A stretch of DNA of 64,000 nucleotides from Fimbriosthenelais zetlandica (Eukaryota), in contig OZ365109.1 of the NCBI GenBank assembly GCA_977030845.1, positions 59,768,001 to 59,832,000 of the forward strand. Reading direction: 5' to 3'. A program made the translations under genes and the position numbers. Under the pieces are notes generated by a model that made no database searches, had not been told where the DNA came from, and saw only the letters and a list, made by a program, of their open reading frames with translations. Shown in pieces: positions 21,344 through 60,043 of this stretch; positions within the stretch are counted from its first letter, which is position 1, and each line of letters begins with the position of its first letter.

Positions 21344-24299
21344 ATGCATCTCATTCCTCCGTCAATCCTTTTGTTTAAATGCAACGCTTTGTCCAAGCAA
21401 CATACAGGTAAATTGATTTTATATTGAATCCTTTGGAGCCATATATACTCAGGTATCTCATCTCTTACATAATGCAGAATAATGTTTGGATATAACATGT
21501 CTATATATGAATTATATTTGATATCCCAAGTGACCCCCATATAACCATGTGTAAATATTGATTTTGGCTGAAATGATACCGATTAGATATGATGATCGAT
21601 TGTACCTCCTGACTAGATCTAAAGCTCCATTACAATTGTGAATATTGACATTCATCGGTATTACATTTGCAATAAATATCCATCTCATCCATCATTCCAT
21701 GTAGGAACACTGTTGCACAAGTCAATCTTATATTTCGATTTCTAATCCTTCACCCATTCCCAGATACCTACTCTTACTATGGCCTCCAGTCACATCCCAG
21801 ACACAAATACTAGCATTGCGAAACTTGGGAAAGATACTTTTTTTCGGTAGGAAAATTGGATTTTTATCGGTGTGATAACAGTTTGGCTGGAGGCCTAAGT
21901 CCACAATTTTAGTGTTTGTTTGCTATTTTCTCTATTGCTAGCATGGAAGCTTGGTAGCGTGCTTCCTGGAGTTCTCACGAACCCTCGGTTGATGGCACGC
22001 ATGTGCATGTGGCTCTCCGCTCCTCCATTCAGCTAATAATACCCTGCTCTGCCCTGCCTATGTTTGGGCTACATTTACAAATTGCTCCATTGAGTCCCGG
22101 TCGAACTGAAGCTGGCCCGAGGCGCTCCAACCTGCTCAGGCGAGTGTCGGTATTCCCCTTCGACTGACATAGAAACCACTAATCGTCCAGTGGTAATATT
22201 TCACCATTTTCAACACAATGGGGTTTATGCAGTGGAATGGCTTGGGTGGGCACCTTCACTCCATGTCTTCTTCAATAAGCCCACGCCATGGTGAATTGAG
22301 CCGTTGTGAATATTTCATTTTTCTCTTCCGGCTGTCGAGCTGTCTGGCTGGGTGGTTGGTTGCTTGGTTAGTTGCTGGGGAGAGTTTTCATTTTCGGCCC
22401 AAGTCCTAACCCCGAAATCACAAATCATATTGGTGAATATTGGTGCAATGAATCGCGAGTGATGAGTGTGCCACTTCTACAAGCCATTGATGTGCCACCG
22501 CGAGCATTCCTGTGGTTGTGTCAGTTGAGAGAAAGAGAGATAGAGAGGGACAGATGCGTAGAAAAAAAGCAAGATGGTTGCAATTGATTGCAGTACAGAG
22601 CAACATCAAAGGTCCGTACCAATAATGTGTTTATGTTGGCAGAAAATCGACTGCCTATCACAACCACGTTTTACCACTGCTACTCTCATTAGCTGCAATA
22701 TCTGGAGCCAGCGGGGGAAAAATAATTTCCTCGATTCTTTGAACTCAGTACATGCCACACATTACCCAAGCCCCATCCTCTGAAAATGATCTCTAGCAAA
22801 GAAAACCATAATGGATCATTCAGCATTATATCTGGAGTTATTCCTTTCCTCCTCCGGTGTAATTATTGACGAGGTACCATCAAATATTACTCCCCTGCCC
22901 GGCCAATATATTGTGGCTGATCACTCAAAGGAAAAAGGCACCGGCGCAAAGGCATCCCTCCAGGGATTATATGTCTCATGATCATTTGATGAAGCCTTCA
23001 ATTTTCCTTCATTATTGCTCTTTTTGATGACTCAACACATTGCATATTTACCTTCCTGATCAATCAAGCATGGGAAAGTGACAAAAATGGACAATCAGTT
23101 TTGTTCTTGTTGGATAGAAGATGAATATTCTAGACACGTTTCTTGTCTGCAATGCAATGTCTAGACTGAGTAGTGACCGACTCTGTTCAGCCAGATTACC
23201 AATCTACATGACCATTAGATGCCAACTTGCTGCCAATATTTGCTCACTCTCAGTGGAATATAATAGAAGTCCCGTTGACATTCACCTGTCCATGATCCGG
23301 ATTCAAATGTCACAGATCAGGAAATATGACTTTCCGGGAAGCGCACGCTATTTAATAATGGATCGCCCTCAGGGACCCTCATAGAAGGAGGGCATATTGG
23401 TTGGGGCCTCAACAGGGCTTAGTGGTCAATGGATTTCCTGCAGCAGGAAAAACAAAAGCTTTGGCTGGTGGGGTTAGGTGGTGGTGGAGGTGGTATGGGC
23501 TGGTGGTTGGAGGACAAATGCCCCCTCCATGGAGGAAACCAATGGAGATATAGGGAGAGGCATTGGTAGGCAGGGTGCGCTGGAGATGGCCTTGCCGTGC
23601 TTTGACGAGGTCTAGGGCCATGCATTATAGATAGAGTTAAATGAGCGTTGGATGAGTTTTGTCAGGGGTATATATGGTAGAAGCAAGAATACTATAGGCA
23701 GGCCGAGCTGTTTCATGGTGCTGGGTAAAAGGTAGGACGCGGAGAAGGCCACTCGTAGAGGGCCTGCAGGCAGATCAGCCATGGCTATTCAGAATACAGT
23801 TTATAGGCAGAATATCTGATCTAAACAAGGACTTAACCTGAACCCCAACCACATAAACAACACAGCATGAGCACTAGTCATGATAAATCGTGAATGAGAG
23901 TCGGTGAGGGAAGAGTCACTCACCGGCAGAGCACAATAACTAGGATGGAGGAAGGCCAATGGTTGTTGATAAACTGATGTGGTCTATGCATGTATTGGTT
24001 TTCATCAGACTGCGGAAGCACGCGCCTGGCCCTGATCTATCTGTAGCTAGCTCTGGCCATGGGTCACTACTCTACAAATGGCTCAAGGAACAGGCCATAC
24101 TGGAATATAGATTGGAATCTGATACCTTCCAACGAAGCATGCATGTTATGGCATAACACGAAGGTACATGAAAATGATGAAGTGTGTGTTAGGCATAATG
24201 AAAAACACGTCCCTCTTATAATAAACTGCACTTTTAATATTTCTTTCAATCCCATTGTTGCGTCCCTTCTTCGTTCGGAAGTTTTTGCACGTTCTCAGA

Positions 24300-24660
24300 T
24301 ACATTTTAACAGGTCTGGGACTGTTCGCACGGTTCTGGGACTGTGCGAACGGTTCCAGAACAGTTAATTGCTTTTAGCACGCATTTGGGACGGGTGTCCC
24401 AGAGGCGTTCCCAACTGGTTCCATGTCCTCTTGGGAGTAGTCCCGCACTAACAGAAAAGATGGTCTTCTATTGGTCCCAGCGAAATTTGGCTTTAATATT
24501 ATATAAAAAATATAAAATTTTATAACGGTTCTAGACCAGTTCAAATGTTACCAAAAGACATAGAACTGTTCTGGGTCTGTTCTAAATATTAAATTTGTCC
24601 CGCGAACGTTCTTGGGACGGGGGTCCCAGATGCGTTCAAATAATATAAAGCCTGTTCCAA
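24300..24660. repeat. Degenerate internally repetitive element (gttct/gggac/gaac motifs)
   Basis: 26-bp direct repeat: ttgggacgggtgtcccagaggcgttc (24385-24410) vs ttgggacgggggtcccagatgcgttc (24612-24637). Repeated gttctgggactgt-like words are also present. Confidence 0.45.
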
Positions 24661-25129
24661 ATGAGTGACGGAAGTGATGCTATGAATAATGATGGATTAT
24701 GGGAAAGATATGGCAGTGCTGCTATAGGCGGCGATCTCGGGAACTAATTTCCTTATTCCTATTTTGGGACTTCCCTGTATGGGCGAGGCTATTTGCAGAC
24801 CAGCAGAACATCATTCGGATTTCGTGAACGGCATCATGGAAAACTAACCTCGTATGGAAAGCCGAATATGAACATAGGATTTTATTTCAGTGGTAGGGCC
24901 TAGTATGAAGAGACTAACAGTGCATTTTTAAGGAAGGTGGGAAACATGTTTCTGCCATATTTTAGCACTTATTAGATGGGGTTCATTGTCATTGAGATAA
25001 CTGCATGATCTTGGAGTCTGGCATAGGCCATCACAACAGGATCACACATAGCCTCATAGGGCATGTATAGGGTAAAAGAGCATGTTTCTACAAGGAGCTC
25101 TAGGCCTACATGGTCAATGATGGTCGGGC

Positions 25130-26554
25130 TAACCAGGTCATTATCACTCCACAGGTCGAGACTAGCAGAGAACAGAATATCTGAACATTATTACACATCC
25201 AGATTAGTAGAACATCATGATCACAGGCGCAGACTAGCAGTCATGATACCACAGGTGCATAATGACTCCACAGGTGTTGACTATCATAACATCATGTCTT
25301 CACAGGTGCAGACTAGCAGCTACCGTACTAGCAGAACATCATGATTGTAGGCTACCAGAATATCATGTTTTCACAGGTGCAGACTAACAGAACATCATCT
25401 CACAGGTGCAGACAACCAGAACATCATGATCTCACAGGCCCAGACTAGCAGAACATCATGATATCACAGGTGCAGACTAGCAGAACAGCATGATTCTACA
25501 GGTGTAGACTACCATAACATCATGTCTTCGCAGGTGTAGACTAGCAGAACATCATGTCATAGGTGCAGACTAGCAGAACATCATGATTCCACAGGTGTAG
25601 ACTATCAGAACATCATCATCTCACAGGTGTAGACTAGTAGAACATCATCTGATAGGTGCAGACTAGCAGAACATCATGATTCTACAGGTGCAAACTACCA
25701 GAACATCATGATTCCACAGGTGTAGACGAGCAGAGCATCATCTCATAGGTGCAGACTAGCAGAACATCATGATTCCACAGGTGTAGACTATCAGAACATC
25801 ATCATCTCACAGGTGTAGACTAGCAGAACATCATCTCACAGACGCAGACTAGCAGAACATCATGATTCTACAGGTGTAGACCACCAGAACATCATGTCTT
25901 CACAGGTGTAGACTAGCAGAACATCATCTGATAGGTGCTGACTAGCAGAACATCATGATTCTACAGGTGCAGACTACCAGAACATCATGATTCCACAGGT
26001 GTAGACGAGCAGAACATCATCTGATAGGTGCAGACTAGCAGAACATCATGATTCCACAGGTGTAGACTATCAGAACATCATGATTCCACAGGTGTAGACG
26101 AGCAGAACATCATCTCATAGGTGCAGACTAGCAGAACATCATGATTCTGCAGGTGTAGACTACCAGAACATCATGTCTTCACAGGTGTAGACTAGCAGAA
26201 CATCATCTGATAGGTGCAGACTAGCAGAACATCATGATTCTACAGGTGCAGACTACCAGAACATCATGATTCCACAGGTGTAGACGAGCAGAACATCATC
26301 TGATAGGTGCAGACTAGCAGAACATCATGATTCCACAGGTGTAGATTATCAGAACATCATCATCTCACAGGTGTAGACTAGCAGAACATCATCTCACAGG
26401 CGCAGACTAGCAGAACATCACGATTCTACAGGTGTAGACTACCAGAACATCATGTCTTCGCAGGTGTAGACTGGCAGAACATCATCATCTCACAGGTGTA
26501 GACTAGCAGAACATCATGATCTCACAGGTGCAGACTAGCAGAACATCATGTCTT
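25130..26554 (+). repeat. Minisatellite array, left arm (29/32-bp units)
   Basis: Tandem units of a 26-bp core acaggtg[t/c]agactagcagaacatcat plus a 3- or 6-nt linker (gattcc, gattct, gtcttc, catctc, gatctc, ctc, ctg). Units are degenerate toward 25130-25400. Confidence 0.95.
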
Positions 26555-28712
26555 GATAATCTACACCTGTGAAGACATGGTGTTTTGCCAGTCTACACCT
26601 GCGAAGACATGATGTTCTGGTAGTCTACACCTGTAGAATCATGATGTTCTGCTAGTCTGCGCCTGTGAGATGATGTTCTGCTAGTCTACACCTGTGAGAT
26701 GATGATGTTCTGATAGTCTACACCTGTGGAATCATGATGTTCTGCTAGTCTGCGCCTGTGAGATGATGTTCTGCCAGTCTACACCTGCGAAGACATGATG
26801 TTCTGGTAGTCTACACCTGTCGAATCATGATGTTCTGCTAGTCTGCGCCTGTGAGATGTTGTTCTGCTAGTCTACACCTGTGAGATGATGATGTTCTGCT
26901 CGTCTACACCTGTGAAGACATGATGTTTTGCCAGTCTACACCTGTGGAATCATGATGTTCTGCTAGTCTGCACCTGTGGAATCATGATGTTCTGCTAGTC
27001 TGCACCTATCAGATGATGTTATGCTAGTCTACACCTGTGAGATGATGATGTTCTGATAGTCTACACCTGTGGAATCATGATGTTCTGCTAGTCTGCACCT
27101 ATGAGATTATGTTCTGCTCGTCTACACCTGTGGAATCATGATGTTCTGCTAGTCTGCACCTATCAGATGATGTTCTGCTAGTCTACACCTGTGAAGACAT
27201 GGTGTTTTGCCAGTCTACACCTGCGAAGACATGATGTTCTGGTAGTCTACACCTGTAGAATCATGATGTTCTGCTATAGTCTGCGCCTGTGAGATGATGT
27301 TCTGCTAGTCTACACCTGTGAGATGATGATGTTCTGATAGTCTAGACCTGTGGAATCATGATGTTCTGCTAGTCTGCACCTATCAGATGATGTTCTGCCA
27401 GTCTACACCTGCGAAGACATGATGTTCTGGTAGTCTACACCTGTAGAATCATGATGTTCTGCTAGTCTGCGCCTGTGAGATTATGTTCTGCTCGTCTACA
27501 CCTGTGAAGACTTGATGTTTTGCCAGTCTAGACCTGTGGAATCATGATGTTCTGGTAGTCTGCACCTGTGGAATCATGATGTTCTGCTAGTCTGCGCCTG
27601 TGAGATGATGTTCTACTAGTCTACACCTGTGAGATGATGATGTTCTGATAGTCTACACCTGTGGAATCATGATGTTCTGCTAGTCTGCACCTATGAGATT
27701 ATGTTCTGCTCGTCTACACCTGTGGAATCATGATGTTCTGCTAGTCTGCACCTATCAGATGATGTTCTGCTAGTATACACCTGTGAAGACATGATGTTCT
27801 GGTAGTCTACACCTGTAGGATCATGATATTCTGCTAGTCTGTACCTGTGAGATCATGATGTTCTGCTAGTCTGCACCTGTGAGATCATGATGTTCTGCTC
27901 GTCTACACCTGTGAAGACATGATGTTCTGGTATTCTGCACCTATGAGATGATGTTCTGCTAGTCTACACCTGCGAGATCATGATGTTCTGCTAGTCTGCA
28001 CCTATCAGATGATGTTATGCTAGTCTACACCTGTGAAGACATGATGTTCTGGTAGTCTTCACCTGTAGAATCATGATGTTCTGATAGTCTACACCTGTGA
28101 GATGATGATGTTCTGATAGTCTACACCTGTGAGATGATGATGTTCTGATAGTCTACACCTGTGAAGACATGATGTTCTGGTAGTCTTGACCTGTAGAATC
28201 ATGATGTTCTGATAGTCTACACCTGTGAGATGATGATGTTCTGATAGTCTACACCTGTGAAGACATGATGTTCTGGTAGTCTTGACCTGTAGAATCATGA
28301 TGTTTTGATAGTCTACACCTGTGAGATGATGATGTTCTGATAGTCTACACCTGTGAGATCATGATGTTCTGCTAGTCTGCACCTATCAGATGATGTTGTG
28401 CTAGTCTACACCTGTGAAGACATGATGTTCTGGTAGTCTTCACCTGTAGAATCATGATGTTCTGATAGTCTACACCTGTGAAGACATGATGTTCTGCTAG
28501 TCTACACCTGTGAAGACATGATGTTCTGCTAGTCTTGGCATGTGAGATGATGTTCTGCTAGTCTGCACGTGTGAGATGATGATGTTCTGCTTGTCTGTAC
28601 CTGTAGAAACATGATGTTCTGCTAGTCTGGGCCTGTAGGATCATGATGTACTGCATGTAGAATCATGATGTTTTGCTAGGCTGAACCTGTGGAAATAGGA
28701 TGTTTTGATGTT
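26555..28712 (-). repeat. Minisatellite array, right arm (same units, reverse-complemented)
   Basis: Units read atgatgttctgctagtct[a/g]cacctgt plus gag/gagatg/gaagac/ggaatc/agaatc. Orientation switches at ...catcatgtctt|gataatctacacctgt (26554/26555). Units are degenerate toward 28560-28712. Confidence 0.95.
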
Positions 28713-29327
28713 CCCGCCCCCTCCCCAAGCCTGCCTTGCCAGGAGATGTGGATATTGGAGACATTTGTGTTAAGCAGGCCTACATGTAGACCCAGACTGA
28801 TCATGTTTTAGATATTTGCAAATTGTTCAATATTATTTTCACAGATTATCTTATGCTCAAGCCATTACATTTGACCTATATTTTTTTTATAGGCCTGAGG
28901 ACATAACGTGTAGACTATAGGCATACCGTAGGCTGTCTGAAATTAAAATGTAGACCCTGCTTCCAATGCATTGTTCTGTGGGCTACCGGTAGTCTATTTG
29001 ATTATAGGGTATGGAATGAATTATAATAGGCCTATCATAATAATTATCTCTAAATTAAGAGCAGCAGAAATGGGCCATGCTGGGCCCTGACATTAGGGTA
29101 GGCCTAGGCCTAGATGAAAATGTAGGCTAATATTAGGCCCTATAGCCTAATATAGGCCTAGGACCTACTACCCGTATAGGGCACCGTGGGACTACATAAG
29201 ACTGGGGGCAGGCAATGGAGGCCTGGAGCTTTTCTTTTTCGAAATAAATACTTGTGAAAATATAGGTTAATTTGACAGAAGGAATTGCTGAAATAAATAT
29301 TATATATTTTGTATGTCATGTGTCCGC

Positions 29328-29358
29328 AATAAAGATGATTGAATTGAATTGAATTGAA
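29328..29358 (+). repeat. AATAAA plus (TTGAA)4, a probable retroelement 3' tail
   Basis: aataaagatgattgaattgaattgaattgaat: a poly(A)-signal-like hexamer followed by a short pentamer microsatellite. Confidence 0.45.
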
Positions 29359-29783
29359 TAAATCTTTTATCCTCATAATAAGGTCATGCTCTTAGGTTTA
29401 TATTGCCATTCGAACCCCTGTTTTCCACCGTTTATGAATAAATAATTTATTTTAAAAGATCCTCCGCCCCCTCCCACCCCGCCATCTATGAGGTGGTCCC
29501 ACCATTTGGAATCAGTCTACAGTTGGCTTTCCATACGAGGTTAGTTTTCCATGATGCCGTTCACGAAGTCCGAATGATGTTCTGCTTGTCTGCAAATAGC
29601 CTCGCCCTCCCTGTATGTAGGGCGTTTTTAGGTACATCTATACTATCACTGGCTAGCCTACACATAAAGACTTATTACATATGTGGTCATTACATCTACC
29701 ATACACTTCCCTCTACGGTTCCACGGCTCGGATATTGTCTTTCATGCATATTCATGAGTCGTCCCGTTTTGCTCTATTATTAT

Positions 29784-29941
29784 TGGATGAACGGGGTCGA
29801 GAACTTCCGTTCCAGAGTCGTTCCAAAGGCATTATATGTCCTGCATTATGATTGGTTTAGAGTGGATGAACGGGCTCGAGAACTTCCGTTCCAGAGTCGT
29901 TCCAAAGGCATTCTATGTCCTGCATTATGATTGGTTTAGAG
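29784..29941 (+). repeat. Tandem duplication, 2 x 79 bp
   Basis: tggatgaacggggtcgagaac...attggtttagag starts at 29784 and again at 29863, with 2 mismatches. Confidence 0.95.
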
Positions 29942-31019
29942 GAATATAATCACCGGGGTTAATCTGTTTATGTCATCTCATTGGCTGCTATATTTTAAGC
30001 CAATGATATTCTTTTATATAAGGCAGTCAGGGGACCAGTGTATTATATTAATAATAATGGCTTTTATTTTTGCTTTATATAATAAGCACGCCTTCGGAAC
30101 CGCATGCATTTGGGGCACTGCACCCATCTTCAAAATATCGGCAAATCAATATTCCCACGAACTGCATTTATAAAGGCAATCTGTGTAATATATTATAGGA
30201 CATTGTGAATAACTGGCATAGGACTCCAAAGTCGTTTGCTTGCGTCCGGGCAATTTGGAATTGTAAAGATTCAACCATTGATATGAGACAGACACCCTAG
30301 CACGTCAAAATATCAATATGATATAGATTAAGCATAGATTTAGGAGGCTATTTATCATCATGTCTCATATACCCATAGCCCACCAGCCATTAGAGCAAAG
30401 AGTGTACTTGGTATATCCGTCAGCCTATATATCCCGAACCAAGCCATCTGTCACCTTATGCTGTCAACCTAGGAGGCAGCGAGTGACCCAGCACCTATGC
30501 TGCCTGTCACTGGAGCACGCTTTTAGAATTGTCTACCCCGCAGTGCAATGCATCACCCTTTGAACCGGGCCCTTCACTCAAAGGAGCTGGAAATTAGAAT
30601 GTCGAAGCTGTTGTATGGTAATGCCCCATTGAGAGATTAAACGTTCTGGATATAAGACTTGACATAACAAGGGTGCTTGAGGCAGCAGTAAATGACCCGA
30701 GGAGAAGAGACTTGAGTCTTAAACATAGCCTGGTGTCTTTGCCCAATCAGTAAGTTAGTACAGATGGATTATAATGAATTATAAAGTTAACATTACTCTA
30801 TCTATTTTTTAATTATGGAAATTCCAAAATAACGGGTACAGATTGATTCAATGATACAAATCTCAACCAATTTTTAAAATTATGATTAGCCAATGAAAAG
30901 AGATCAGAATCAATATGTGAATGCATGCATGGACGAAGCTAGAAATATACACAATTTGAAGTATTAAAAAAAATATTAGAAAGGATTTCTGTACGTTATT
31001 TCTGTATCCTTACAATTGC

Positions 31020-58444: not shown

Positions 58445-60043
58445 CTATGGGGCGCCAAGTGTTACCTTTTATATTTCGTACTTCAATTATTTATTTCGAT
58501 ACGAAATATTTTTTATTTTGTACCACAATTAAAATTCCGTGGACGGAATTTTAATTAATTTTAATTCCGTGGACGGAATTTTAATTAATTTTAATTTCGT
58601 GGAAGGAATTAATATTCCGTGGACGGAATTAAAATTAATTAAAATTAATTAAAATTAATTAAAATTAATTAAAATTCCGTCCACGGAATATTAATTCCTT
58701 CCACGGAATTAAAATTAATTAAAATTCCGTCCACGGAATTAAAATTAATTAAAATTCCGTCCACAGAATGTTAATTCTGTAGACGGAATTAAAATTTCGT
58801 TGACGGAATTAATTAATTCCGTCCACAGAATTTTAATTCCGTCCACAGAATTTTAATTCTGTAGACAGAATTAAAATTTCGTTGACGGAATTAATTTATT
58901 CCGTCCACAGAATTAAAATTTCGTTGACGGAATTAATTAATTCCGTCCACAGAATTTTAATTCTGTACACAAAATTAAAATTTCGTTGACGGAATTAATT
59001 AATTCCGTCTATTTCCTTCAACCACCATAAGGTGGCAGCACTCTCTCTTCAAAAACCTGTTAGGCCTAGGGCCTACTTGATTCAGGGGACAGTGATTCAC
59101 TCCTAGCCTAGCGACCAATGTGAATAATTACCACTGCGCATGCGCGATCATGACCCAGTTATGATGTCACGGGGTCACCGTTACCAAAGCGCCACTCCCA
59201 AGCACTGACGTCAGGTTCCCGCCATGTGTCCGCTATGACGTGCTGATCGCCGACAGGGCTACTGGCGCTTTTATTTCTTATTTTTAAGCTATTTATTATA
59301 GTCATCAGATCTACCAATGGGACTTAGCATATGCTCTAAATGGACCAACTTTTATTATGTGATACTGATCATTGGTGAGAGTGCTTTTCTTGGGCGGGGC
59401 AAAGGTGGTGACGTCGGGGAACTCATGGCAATACTGGGGGAGCTATGACAACACAACGTTATTCGTTGTCTTGATGTTGCAGGACTCATGGCGACAGCAG
59501 ATCAACACTGACAACAACTTCGTTTCTCTAGGTTTTACAATCCCTGAACGTGCTGCCACCTTATGTTGGTTGAAGGAAATAGACGGAATTAATTAATTCT
59601 GTCAACGACATTTTAATTCTGTGGACGGAATTAATTAATTCCGTCAACGAAATTTTAATTCTGTCTACAGAATTAAAATTCTGTGGACGGAATTAATTAA
59701 TTCCGTCAACGAAATTTTAATTCTGTCTACACAATTAAAATTCTGTGGACGGAATTTTAATTCCGTGGAAGGAATTAATATTCTGTGGACGGAATTTTAA
59801 TTAATTAATATTCCGTGGACGGAATTTTAATTAATTTTAATTCCGTGGAAGGAATTAATATTCCGTGGACGGAATTTTAATCAATTTTAATTCCGTCCAC
59901 GGAATATTAATTCCTTCCACGGAAATTAAAATTAATTAAAATTCCGTCCACGGAATTTTAATTCCAGACGAAATAAAATAAATTGAAACAAAATTAAATA
60001 ATTGTGGTACAAAATATAAAAGGTAACACTTGGCGCCCCATAT
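58445..60043. mobile_element. Foldback-type non-autonomous DNA transposon (long repeat-built inverted arms plus spacer)
   Basis: Perfect 31-bp outer inverted repeat tatggggcgccaagtgttaccttttatattt (58446-58476; reverse complement at 60012-60042). Arms are built of aattccgt[gg/cc]acggaatt-type units. Inner inverted ends ...ttccttcaaccaccataaggtggcagcac (to 59041) and gtgctgccaccttatgttggttgaagg (from 59550). TTAA lies on both sides (58441-58444, 60044-60047). Confidence 0.9.
59042..59549. promoter_or_regulatory. Promoter-like spacer inside the foldback element
   Basis: CCAAT 59115; TGCGCATGCGC (NRF1-type) 59135-59145; TGACGTCA (CRE) 59206-59213; TTCCCGCC (E2F-type) 59216-59223 overlapping CCGCCAT (YY1-type); TGACGTG 59236; ATTGG 59371; GGGCGGGGC (GC box) 59392-59400; TGACGTC 59409; CATGGCG 59487. 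Confidence 0.5.

What the first reader, a model, noticed from the sequence alone, without database searches (positions are those of the whole stretch)
25130..28712. 3.6-kb palindromic minisatellite with fresh centre and worn outer ends
Seen: about 110 units (3.6 kb / ~31 bp) run forward to 26554 and as reverse complements from 26555, with no spacer at the junction. A five-unit block carrying rare variants (acaggcgcagac, gcaggtgtagactggc) occurs on both sides near the junction (about 26331-26480 forward, about 26577-26735 inverted). Both outer ends are decayed yet share the rare variant acaggcccagactagcagaac (25434-25454; reverse complement at 28616-28636). The unique flanks are not inverted copies of each other. 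Inference: a simple in-place inversion would put a worn end at the junction. The observed pattern instead fits an old inverted duplication whose centre keeps being renewed by arm-to-arm conversion or slippage. Such a structure could extrude a large hairpin or cruciform, or give long dsRNA if it lies inside the host pre-mRNA.
Basis: partly seen in the sequence, partly recalled or inferred. Interest (0 to 1): 0.75.

Follow-up and report, generated by a model that had tools for sequence, protein, structure and literature searches.

The report
Foldback transposon with minisatellite arms
The 3.6-kb palindromic minisatellite is real, but it is the inside of a 4.8-kb non-coding "foldback" jumping element that landed here ready-made, so it is a new family of a known kind of mobile DNA, not a palindrome that grew at this spot.

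Summary
The array is as described: about 109 units of 29-32 bp run forward to 26554 and inverted from 26555, with no spacer.

It is not a local structure. It lies inside a discrete 4,827-bp element (24781-29607). Uninterrupted paralogues of the ~1,032-bp host repeat carry those 9 bp once, which proves insertion.

At least seven other copies share the same termini. Three of them carry the identical centre junction, one with a single mismatch. Two more have a 5'-truncated LINE inserted exactly at that junction.

A sister family has homologous TIRs, a different 32-bp unit and the same forward-then-inverted layout. In each family the unit core matches a motif in its own TIR.

Near-identical copies differ by indels that are multiples of 93 bp, located inside the arms and not at the centre. 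The "fresh centre" block is a higher-order-repeat marker that recurs about 20 units further out.

Best reading: a non-autonomous foldback DNA transposon, probably Mutator/Rehavkus-like. No transposase was linked to it.

No sequencing runs were listed, so read support and RNA could not be tested. Earlier notes of this scan recorded other foldback families in this genome, but not this one.

The parts
24255..24780 (.). Left half of the ~1,032-bp host repeat into which the element inserted. The family has more than 100 copies at 97-100% identity.
   Evidence: homology to many loci covers window 24255-24780 and stops at the element
24772..24780 (+). Left copy of the 9-bp target-site duplication TCCCTGTAT
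   Evidence: read directly; in uninterrupted host-repeat copies the two flank matches overlap by exactly 9 bp.
24781..24863 (+). Left 83-bp terminal inverted repeat (GGGCGAGGCTATTTGCAGACCAGCAGAACATCAT...). Positions 14-34 hold the motif that forms the core of the minisatellite unit.
   Evidence: 83 bp, 97.6% to the reverse complement of the right end; motif vs unit, 20/21
24864..25129 (+). Left subterminal non-repetitive segment, conserved among copies
25130..26554 (+). Left arm: about 42 forward units of 29/32 bp with 93- and 279-bp higher-order periods. The outermost 4 units are degenerate.
26545..26565 (.). Centre junction (26554|26555), ...CATCATGTCTT|GATAATCTACACC.... It is asymmetric within the unit and has no spacer.
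   Evidence: the same 120 bp at C10:26.0M and C27:4.0M; C1:18.69M with 1 mismatch; LINE inserted exactly here in two other copies
26555..28712 (-). Right arm: about 67 inverted units with 93- and 125-bp higher-order periods. The outermost units are degenerate.
28713..29524 (+). Right subterminal non-repetitive segment. Its last ~80 bp together with the TIR (29446-29607) are shared with a much more abundant repeat family.
29525..29607 (-). Right 83-bp terminal inverted repeat
29608..29616 (+). Right copy of the 9-bp target-site duplication TCCCTGTAT
29608..30122 (.). Right half of the host repeat

Best explanation
Window 24781-29607 is one copy of a non-autonomous foldback-type DNA transposon. 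Its two long inverted arms are tandem amplifications of a ~20-bp motif that also sits in its 83-bp terminal inverted repeats.

Shown:
- The element is a discrete unit that inserts with a 9-bp target-site duplication.
- The palindromic layout and the exact centre junction are inherited by each copy.
- It encodes no protein of transposase size.
- The arrays change length in steps of the 93-bp higher-order repeat, inside the arms.

Inferred:
- It is moved in trans by a transposase that recognises the TIR motif. The arrayed motif copies would serve as extra binding sites, as proposed or shown for Galileo, Tetris and other foldback elements.
- The transposase is probably of the Mutator/Rehavkus type, judged from the 9-bp duplication, the long TIRs, the subterminal minisatellites and a host that earlier notes of this scan call annelid-like.
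- Array length changes arise by replication slippage, unequal sister exchange or gap repair.
For: 1. Discrete termini. Homology between this copy and seven others (C10:26.0M, C27:4.0M, C19:20.1M, C27:15.99M, C1:18.69M, C11:41.35M, C11:22.99M) ends at GGGCGAGG...CCTCGCCC at nearly every end (the left terminus of C19:20.1M is not recognisable), with unrelated flanks.
2. Insertion proven. The window flanks are the two halves of a ~1,032-bp repeat. In at least 5 intact copies the left-flank and right-flank matches overlap by exactly 9 bp, which is the duplicated TCCCTGTAT. A second copy has an 8-9-bp direct repeat, CCAAAATA.
3. The junction is inherited. The identical 120 bp around 26554|26555 occur at two other loci, and at a third with one mismatch. 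Two further copies carry a 1.1-kb poly(A)-tailed, 5'-truncated LINE fragment exactly at that junction and are 99.6% identical to each other there.
4. Polarity is uniform. All 7 two-armed copies of this family and all 7 sister-family loci I fetched run forward then inverted, and each terminal motif has the orientation of its neighbouring arm.
5. The sister family has a homologous TIR (62/91 identical). Each family's unit core matches its own TIR motif (20/21 and 17/18) better than the other family's (14/19 and 16/21).
6. No ORF longer than 93 aa lies wholly inside the element. The long ORFs inside other copies are nested retrotransposons.
7. The copy at C10 differs from this one by 2 substitutions in 3,053 bp, plus one 837-bp (9 x 93) indel in the left arm. 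The copy at C27:4.0M has a left arm 3,720 bp (40 x 93) longer.
8. Literature. Rehavkus elements (annelids and arthropods) have 9-bp TSDs, TIRs of 26-400 bp and subterminal minisatellites (PMC6446971), with inverted termini carrying up to tens of tandem repeats (bioRxiv 10.1101/2024.12.02.626372). Tetris and Tm1 are foldback elements with 8-10-bp TSDs (PMC4079207, PMC3169594).
Against: - No autonomous partner was found. None of the 46 MULE-domain hits in the genome lies within 10 kb of a listed TIR hit.
- Only 2 of the 7 copies with both termini recognisable show a clean target-site duplication. The most similar copy (C10) has none, and its flanks are single-copy, so no empty site exists to check.
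- The same 83-162-bp terminal module lies inside a ~550-bp repeat with roughly 950 candidate sites, whose ends are ~354 bp further out. The relation between the families is therefore unresolved.
- No read-level or RNA data could be consulted (none was listed).
Confidence: 0.9

Rival explanations
1. One reading: an old inverted duplication formed at this locus, whose centre is kept fresh by arm-to-arm conversion or slippage while the outer ends decay.
For: The outer units are degenerate and share one private variant. A mirrored block of about 190 bp sits at the centre. Within-arm and between-arm unit distances are equal, which fits exchange between arms.
Against: The same junction, the same worn outer ends and the same termini occur at other loci. 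Insertion with a 9-bp duplication is shown by empty sites. The centre block recurs about 20 units further out. Differences between copies lie mid-arm, not at the centre.
Confidence: 0.03
2. An assembly artefact: a fold-back chimeric read or a mis-join of two opposite-strand arrays.
For: Palindromic tandem arrays are hard to assemble. No reads could be laid on the region.
Against: The arms are only ~88% complementary and of different lengths, so they are not one molecule read twice. The identical junction was assembled at four loci on three contigs. At two more loci a LINE sits exactly in it. The sister family shows the same layout at at least 7 loci.
Confidence: 0.02
3. A dispersed satellite or segmental duplication spread by recombination, not by transposition.
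For: Five of the 7 copies with both termini lack a recognisable target-site duplication. One copy has only one arm.
Against: The boundaries are base-exact and identical at the termini found (all but the truncated left end of C19:20.1M), they coincide with 83-bp TIRs, and there is one empty-site-verified 9-bp duplication. Foldback elements are known to lose matching duplications through ectopic exchange between copies (Galileo chimeras; PMC3573991).
Confidence: 0.03
4. A host-used hairpin-RNA locus: when transcribed, the element gives long double-stranded RNA that feeds small-RNA silencing. This would be an added function on top of being a transposon.
For: Very stable predicted hairpin.
Against: No expression data were available. 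No promoter or gene context was established: none of the ten long window ORFs scanned has a Pfam hit and the window has no Rfam match. The copy sits inside another repeat.
Confidence: 0.05

Closest known systems
Rehavkus elements (a Mutator-related group; Repbase Rehavkus-1_HR and Rehavkus-1/3_TC)
   Same: [quoted passage not shown] Hosts include annelids. Repeat number varies widely between copies (PMC6446971; bioRxiv 10.1101/2024.12.02.626372).
   Different: No transposase with a DDE domain and PHD finger was linked to this family. Here the arrays meet head-on with no central segment at all. Sequence relatedness to Repbase Rehavkus entries could not be tested.
Drosophila Foldback (FB) elements
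   Same: Long inverted arms made of short tandem subrepeats (a 31-bp unit in FB, from my own knowledge). The arms are more regular inside and irregular at the outer ends. Many copies have little or no central loop. Arm lengths are unequal and variable.
   Different: Unrelated sequence and host. FB arms reach the very termini, whereas here 266 and 812 bp of unique DNA separate the arrays from the 83-bp TIRs.
Tetris (Drosophila virilis foldback transposon)
   Same: A flanking TIR domain followed by a tandem-repeat domain whose unit shares a short stretch with the terminal domain. TSDs of 8-10 bp. Only non-autonomous copies are known, and it was assigned to Mutator on TSD length alone (PMC4079207).
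   Different: The Tetris unit is about 220 bp with few copies and a middle domain. Here the unit is 32 bp, with 40-180 copies per arm and no middle domain.
Galileo (P superfamily, Drosophila)
   Same: Foldback-like long TIRs with internal tandem repeats that carry secondary transposase-binding sites. The two arms change length independently. Chimeric copies lack matching TSDs (PMC3573991).
   Different: Galileo makes 7-bp duplications; this element makes 9 bp.
Tm1 (Mutator/Foldback family of root-knot nematodes)
   Same: Composite TIRs built mostly of short tandem repeats, 9-bp TSDs, and mostly non-autonomous copies. The insertion was validated through paralogous empty sites (PMC3169594).
   Different: Tm1 has 13-15-bp repeats, much shorter arms, and a known transposase-encoding member.

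Membership tests
Foldback-type DNA transposon (structural class) | Two long inverted arms built of tandem subrepeats | tested here: met
   42 forward and 67 inverted 29/32-bp units
Foldback-type DNA transposon (structural class) | Discrete element with inverted termini, found at several loci with unrelated flanks | tested here: met
   eight copies, GGGCGAGG...CCTCGCCC termini (one left end truncated), 83-bp TIR
Foldback-type DNA transposon (structural class) | Target-site duplication on insertion, with the empty site recoverable | tested here: met
   9-bp overlap of the flank matches in intact host-repeat copies. Only 2 of 7 copies show a direct repeat.
Foldback-type DNA transposon (structural class) | Mobilised by a transposase acting on the termini or subrepeats | not testable with these tools
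   No autonomous copy found. Binding needs an experiment.
Mutator / Rehavkus superfamily | TSD of 9 bp (8-11) | tested here: met
   reference values from PMC6446971 Table 1
Mutator / Rehavkus superfamily | Long TIRs (26-400 bp) with a subterminal minisatellite | tested here: met
   PMC6446971; bioRxiv 10.1101/2024.12.02.626372
Mutator / Rehavkus superfamily | A related autonomous element encoding a MULE-type DDE transposase (with a PHD finger in Rehavkus) | tested here: inconclusive
   46 PF10551 hits in the genome, many in open frames of 400-860 aa, but none near a listed TIR hit. The loci could not be fetched.
Mutator / Rehavkus superfamily | Sequence similarity of the termini to described Rehavkus or MULE entries | not testable with these tools
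   No Repbase or Dfam library on hand
Galileo / P superfamily | 7-bp (P: 8-bp) target-site duplication | tested here: not met
   9 bp here; 7 bp for Galileo (PMC3573991)
In-situ palindromic amplification (inverted duplication at the locus) | Structure unique to the locus, with flanks continuous with the ancestral sequence and no TIR or TSD | tested here: not met

The most novel reading that the evidence does not exclude
The arrays are not passive minisatellites. They are family-specific amplifications of the transposase-binding motif that co-evolve with the TIR, since two sister families each keep unit and TIR motif matched. In addition, the spacer-less palindrome centre may be a preferred break site that captures retroelements: a truncated LINE sits at the exact junction base in a lineage that then spread to two loci. 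If both hold, this family would be a natural system for studying how binding-site dosage and hairpin fragility shape foldback transposons, in a group of animals where such elements are known only from Repbase entries.
Probability: 0.2. Interest if true: 0.5.

Novelty: new member of a known kind. Interest (0 to 1): 0.3.

Why it matters
The finding turns an apparently exotic 3.6-kb palindrome into a well-defined, recently active foldback transposon family with exact ends, a verified 9-bp target duplication and a sister family.

Uses:
- Repeat annotation of this genome. These elements will otherwise be called satellites or assembly errors.
- Flagging fragile, hairpin-forming sites.
- A clean example of a TIR motif and an internal minisatellite changing together.

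It does not reveal a new kind of system.

Tried and rejected
- Perfect-palindrome test: the longest exact symmetric run near the junction is 4 bp, so it is not a true palindrome.
- My first sliding-window identity script allowed free gaps and gave meaningless values near 100%. I replaced it with a unit-by-unit edit-distance map.
- Central 'loops' of other copies as a source of transposase: the 1.1-kb insert is a LINE reverse-transcriptase C-terminal fragment with a poly(A) tail (no Pfam hit; Atlas lead). The 3.8-kb insert is a copia-type element. The sister-family centres of 58-2,743 bp have no ORF of 120 aa or more.
- ORFs near solitary TIR modules: a Ty3-type retrotransposon, a galactosyltransferase gene, and others without Pfam hits. 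None is a transposase.
- Pairing of TIR hits genome-wide: apart from the known copies and one 3.2-kb arrayless element (L025), no convergent pair lies within 20 kb among the 100 listed of 118 hits.
- Co-location of MULE-domain hits with TIR hits: none.
- Empty site for the C10 copy: its flanks are single-copy, so this gave no information.
- Gene context: none of the ten long window ORFs scanned has a Pfam hit, and Rfam finds nothing in the window.
- Sequencing runs: none was listed.
I did not try to obtain those letters through another tool.
- Whether the one-armed copy C11:22.99M is ancestral or a deletion derivative: the boundary was inspected and left undecided.
Full report
**1. What is there**

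Reading 24900-29000 and Tandem Repeats Finder confirm a tandem array. Its units run forward up to 26554 and as reverse complements from 26555.
- Anchoring on the CAGGTGTAGAC start gives 42 units on the left and 67 on the right. Most are 32 or 29 bp.
- Higher-order periods are 93 and 279 bp on the left and 93 and 125 bp on the right.
- The switch has no spacer, but it is not symmetric within the unit.
- The longest exact symmetric run near the junction is 4 bp.
- The best mirror-register alignment is 422 bp at 88%. Other registers give 83-91%.
- The arms are unequal: 1,425 and 2,158 bp.

**2.

- The five-unit block next to the junction is real. Left units 3-7 differ from right units 2-6 by 4 positions in about 157 bp.
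- The same block recurs about 19-20 units further out on both arms with 5 differences.
- Its 'rare' markers occur 5-6 times in the right arm. It is therefore a marker of the higher-order repeat and not a sign of a renewed centre.
- Mirror similarity falls to background after about 6 units.
- Mean unit distances are identical within and between arms, 5.40 in each comparison.
- The outermost four units on each side are broken by indels.
- CAGGCCCAGAC is indeed private to the two outer ends.

**3. It is a discrete, dispersed element**

A search of the window's own 447-Mb assembly with 600 bp of the array found the repeat at several other loci. At nearly every one, forward hits are followed by inverted hits. 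After fetching seven loci:
- Homology to the window stops near 24781 on the left (24761-24797, depending on the copy) and at exactly 29607 on the right in all of them.
- Those points are the ends of an 83-bp terminal inverted repeat, GGGCGAGGCTATTTGCAGAC... (24781-24863 and 29525-29607, 2 mismatches).
- Beyond the termini the flanks are unrelated between loci.

**4. Proof of insertion**

- The element is flanked by TCCCTGTAT on both sides (24772-24780 and 29608-29616).
- The window flanks are themselves the two halves of a ~1,032-bp repeat with more than 100 copies at 97-100% identity (24255-24780 and 29608-30122).
- In uninterrupted copies the left-flank and right-flank matches overlap by exactly 9 bp. 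Examples are C11:7308473-7309504, C11:4869338-4870369, C25:4518466-4519497, C29:3633523-3634566 and C13:13426513-13427557.
- These are paralogous empty sites. The 4,827-bp element inserted as a unit and duplicated 9 bp.
- The host-repeat copy is 100% identical to other copies over 400-526 bp on each side, so the insertion is young.
- A second copy (C27:4.0M) has an 8-9-bp direct repeat.
- The other five copies with both termini show none. For the closest copy (C10) the flanks are single-copy and give no empty site.
- Non-matching flanks are known in foldback elements as products of exchange between copies (Galileo; PMC3573991). I did not test that here.

**5. The palindrome is inherited, not made here**

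- The 120 bp around the junction are identical at C10:26.0M and C27:4.0M, and differ by one base at C1:18.69M.
- At C19:20.1M and C27:15.99M a 1.1-kb segment sits exactly between ...GTCTT and GATAATC... .
- That segment has a poly(A) tail (seen as poly-T) and a 277-codon open frame. The frame had no Pfam hit. The protein atlas places it with jockey-type non-LTR reverse transcriptases (the atlas hit is a lead only).
- The two loci are 99.6% identical across it. The element therefore spread again after the LINE hit.
- These six independent assemblies of the same centre make a fold-back assembly artefact very unlikely.
- No sequencing run was listed for the region, so this could not be checked on reads.

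**6. How the arrays change**

- This copy and the C10 copy differ by 2 substitutions over the 3,053 bp right of the junction.
- On the left they differ by one substitution plus a single 837-bp (9 x 93) length difference. It maps 473-615 bp from the junction.
- The C27:4.0M copy has a left arm 3,720 bp (40 x 93) longer. The first ~1,240 bp from the left end and the ~530-615 bp next to the junction are colinear with this copy.
- Turnover is thus by whole higher-order units inside the arm. The centre and the worn outer ends are the stable parts.
- One diverged copy (C11:41.35M) has a different, more symmetric centre.
- One 2.5-kb copy (C11:22.99M) has only the forward arm. I could not decide whether that state is ancestral or derived.

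**7. Link between arms and termini, and a sister family**

- The core of the unit matches positions 14-34 of the TIR at 20 of 21 positions.
- A second family makes up the ~70% matches. Its unit consensus is CAGGCACAGACGCTCACAACAGCATGATTCCA.
- I fetched 7 of its loci. All have the same layout: 70-136 forward units, then 77-183 inverted units. Centres are 58-2,743 bp without ORFs of 120 aa or more. A lone motif copy lies about 290 bp outside the arrays.
- Its termini (GGGGGCCGCTAAATGGAGACGCTCAGAACAGCAT...) are homologous to those of the first family, 62 of 91 identical.
- Its unit core matches its own TIR motif at 17/18. The cross-family comparisons are 14/19 and 16/21.
- Unit and TIR motif have therefore changed together in two lineages. 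This is what one expects if the arrays are multiplied transposase-binding sites, or if they are repeatedly re-seeded from the TIR. That step is inference.
- All 14 two-armed loci examined have the same polarity, and each arm has the orientation of its nearby TIR motif.
- Each unit also contains a 12/15 self-complementary stretch, AGAACATCATGATCT.

**8. Coding capacity and superfamily**

- No ORF above 93 aa lies wholly within the element.
- Inserts in other copies are a copia-type element and the LINE fragment.
- ORFs near solitary TIR modules are unrelated: a Ty3-type element and a galactosyltransferase.
- The first 20 nt of the TIR occur 118 times in the genome with at most 1 mismatch.
- Most of those sites belong to a ~550-bp repeat with about 950 candidate sites. 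In it the module is internal, and the repeat ends ~354 bp further out. The relation of that family to this one is open.
- The genome has at least 46 MULE-domain hits, many in open frames of 400-860 aa.
- The 9-bp duplication, long TIRs and subterminal minisatellites fit Mutator-related foldback elements. They fit the Rehavkus group in particular, which is described from annelids and arthropods (PMC6446971; bioRxiv 10.1101/2024.12.02.626372).
- They also fit Tetris and Tm1 (PMC4079207, PMC3169594). They exclude Galileo/P, which makes 7-bp duplications (PMC3573991).
- I put the foldback-transposon reading at 0.9 and the Mutator/Rehavkus placement at about 0.5.
- That the host is an annelid rests on earlier AI notes of this scan and on the atlas taxa. 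I did not verify it.

**9. Hairpin potential**

- The central 885 nt fold into one long hairpin: -431 kcal/mol as DNA, against a shuffle mean of -132, z = -66.
- Nothing shows transcription. None of the ten long window ORFs scanned has a Pfam hit, and the window has no Rfam match. The copy lies inside another repeat.

**10. Verdict**

This is a young copy of a non-autonomous foldback DNA transposon, a known kind. The family itself is probably undescribed. The modestly interesting points are:
- the matched change of TIR motif and array unit in two sister families;
- the LINE captured at the exact palindrome centre;
- the clean empty-site proof of insertion.

Earlier notes of this scan had recorded other foldback families in this genome. 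The look-ups did not return this minisatellite-armed family.

Noticed in passing
window 24255-24780 + 29608-30122: The element sits in a ~1,032-bp repeat with more than 100 copies at 97-100% identity genome-wide. The repeat has no terminal inverted repeats and no ORF with a Pfam hit, and it contains a 79-bp x 2 tandem at 29784-29941. It looks like a very young, unclassified mobile family.
   Followed up: partly
L013:7370-8460 (C19:20.13M) and L014:6280-7330 (C27:15.99M): A 5'-truncated, poly(A)-tailed non-LTR retrotransposon fragment (277-aa frame) is inserted at exactly the junction base of the palindrome. It is 99.6% identical at two loci, so the composite moved again. The palindrome centre may be a preferred break or insertion point.
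   Followed up: partly
L025:1-3700 (C10:13.435M) and about 950 candidate sites genome-wide: The 83-162-bp terminal module of this element is an internal part of a ~550-bp repeat whose ends lie ~354 bp further out. That outer part contains CCAAT-like and TATA-like words. L025 is a 3.2-kb arrayless foldback with a 58-bp tandem duplication of the motif region. It may be the ~1,000-copy foldback family that earlier notes describe.
   Followed up: partly
L031-L037 (e.g. C1:22.12M, C10:45.49M, C10:49.35M): Sister foldback family with a different 32-bp unit, arms of up to 183 units (about 5.8 kb), and centres from 58 bp to 2.7 kb with no ORF of 120 aa or more. L032 and L033 have identical internal spacings, which suggests a segmental duplication on contig 1.
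   Followed up: partly
L017:4325-6865 (C11:22.99M): A one-armed 2.5-kb copy: the forward array abuts the right subterminal segment directly and the inverted arm is absent. Whether this state is ancestral or a deletion is undecided.
   Followed up: partly
L030 (C1:18691500-18695500): A copia-type LTR retrotransposon with a 1,099-aa open gag-pol frame is nested in the forward arm of another copy.
   Followed up: yes
window 58527-59957: A second, unrelated inverted pair of tandem arrays (units built on AATTCCGTGGACGGAATT, periods of 20-80 bp).
   Followed up: no
flanks of copies at C10:26.0M, C1:18.69M, C27:15.99M, C11:41.35M, C11:22.99M: Copies without a matching target duplication often have a GGG(G/C) word 4-12 bp outside the right terminus. 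This resembles the start of the TIR. It could be a target preference, a footprint or chance.
   Followed up: no
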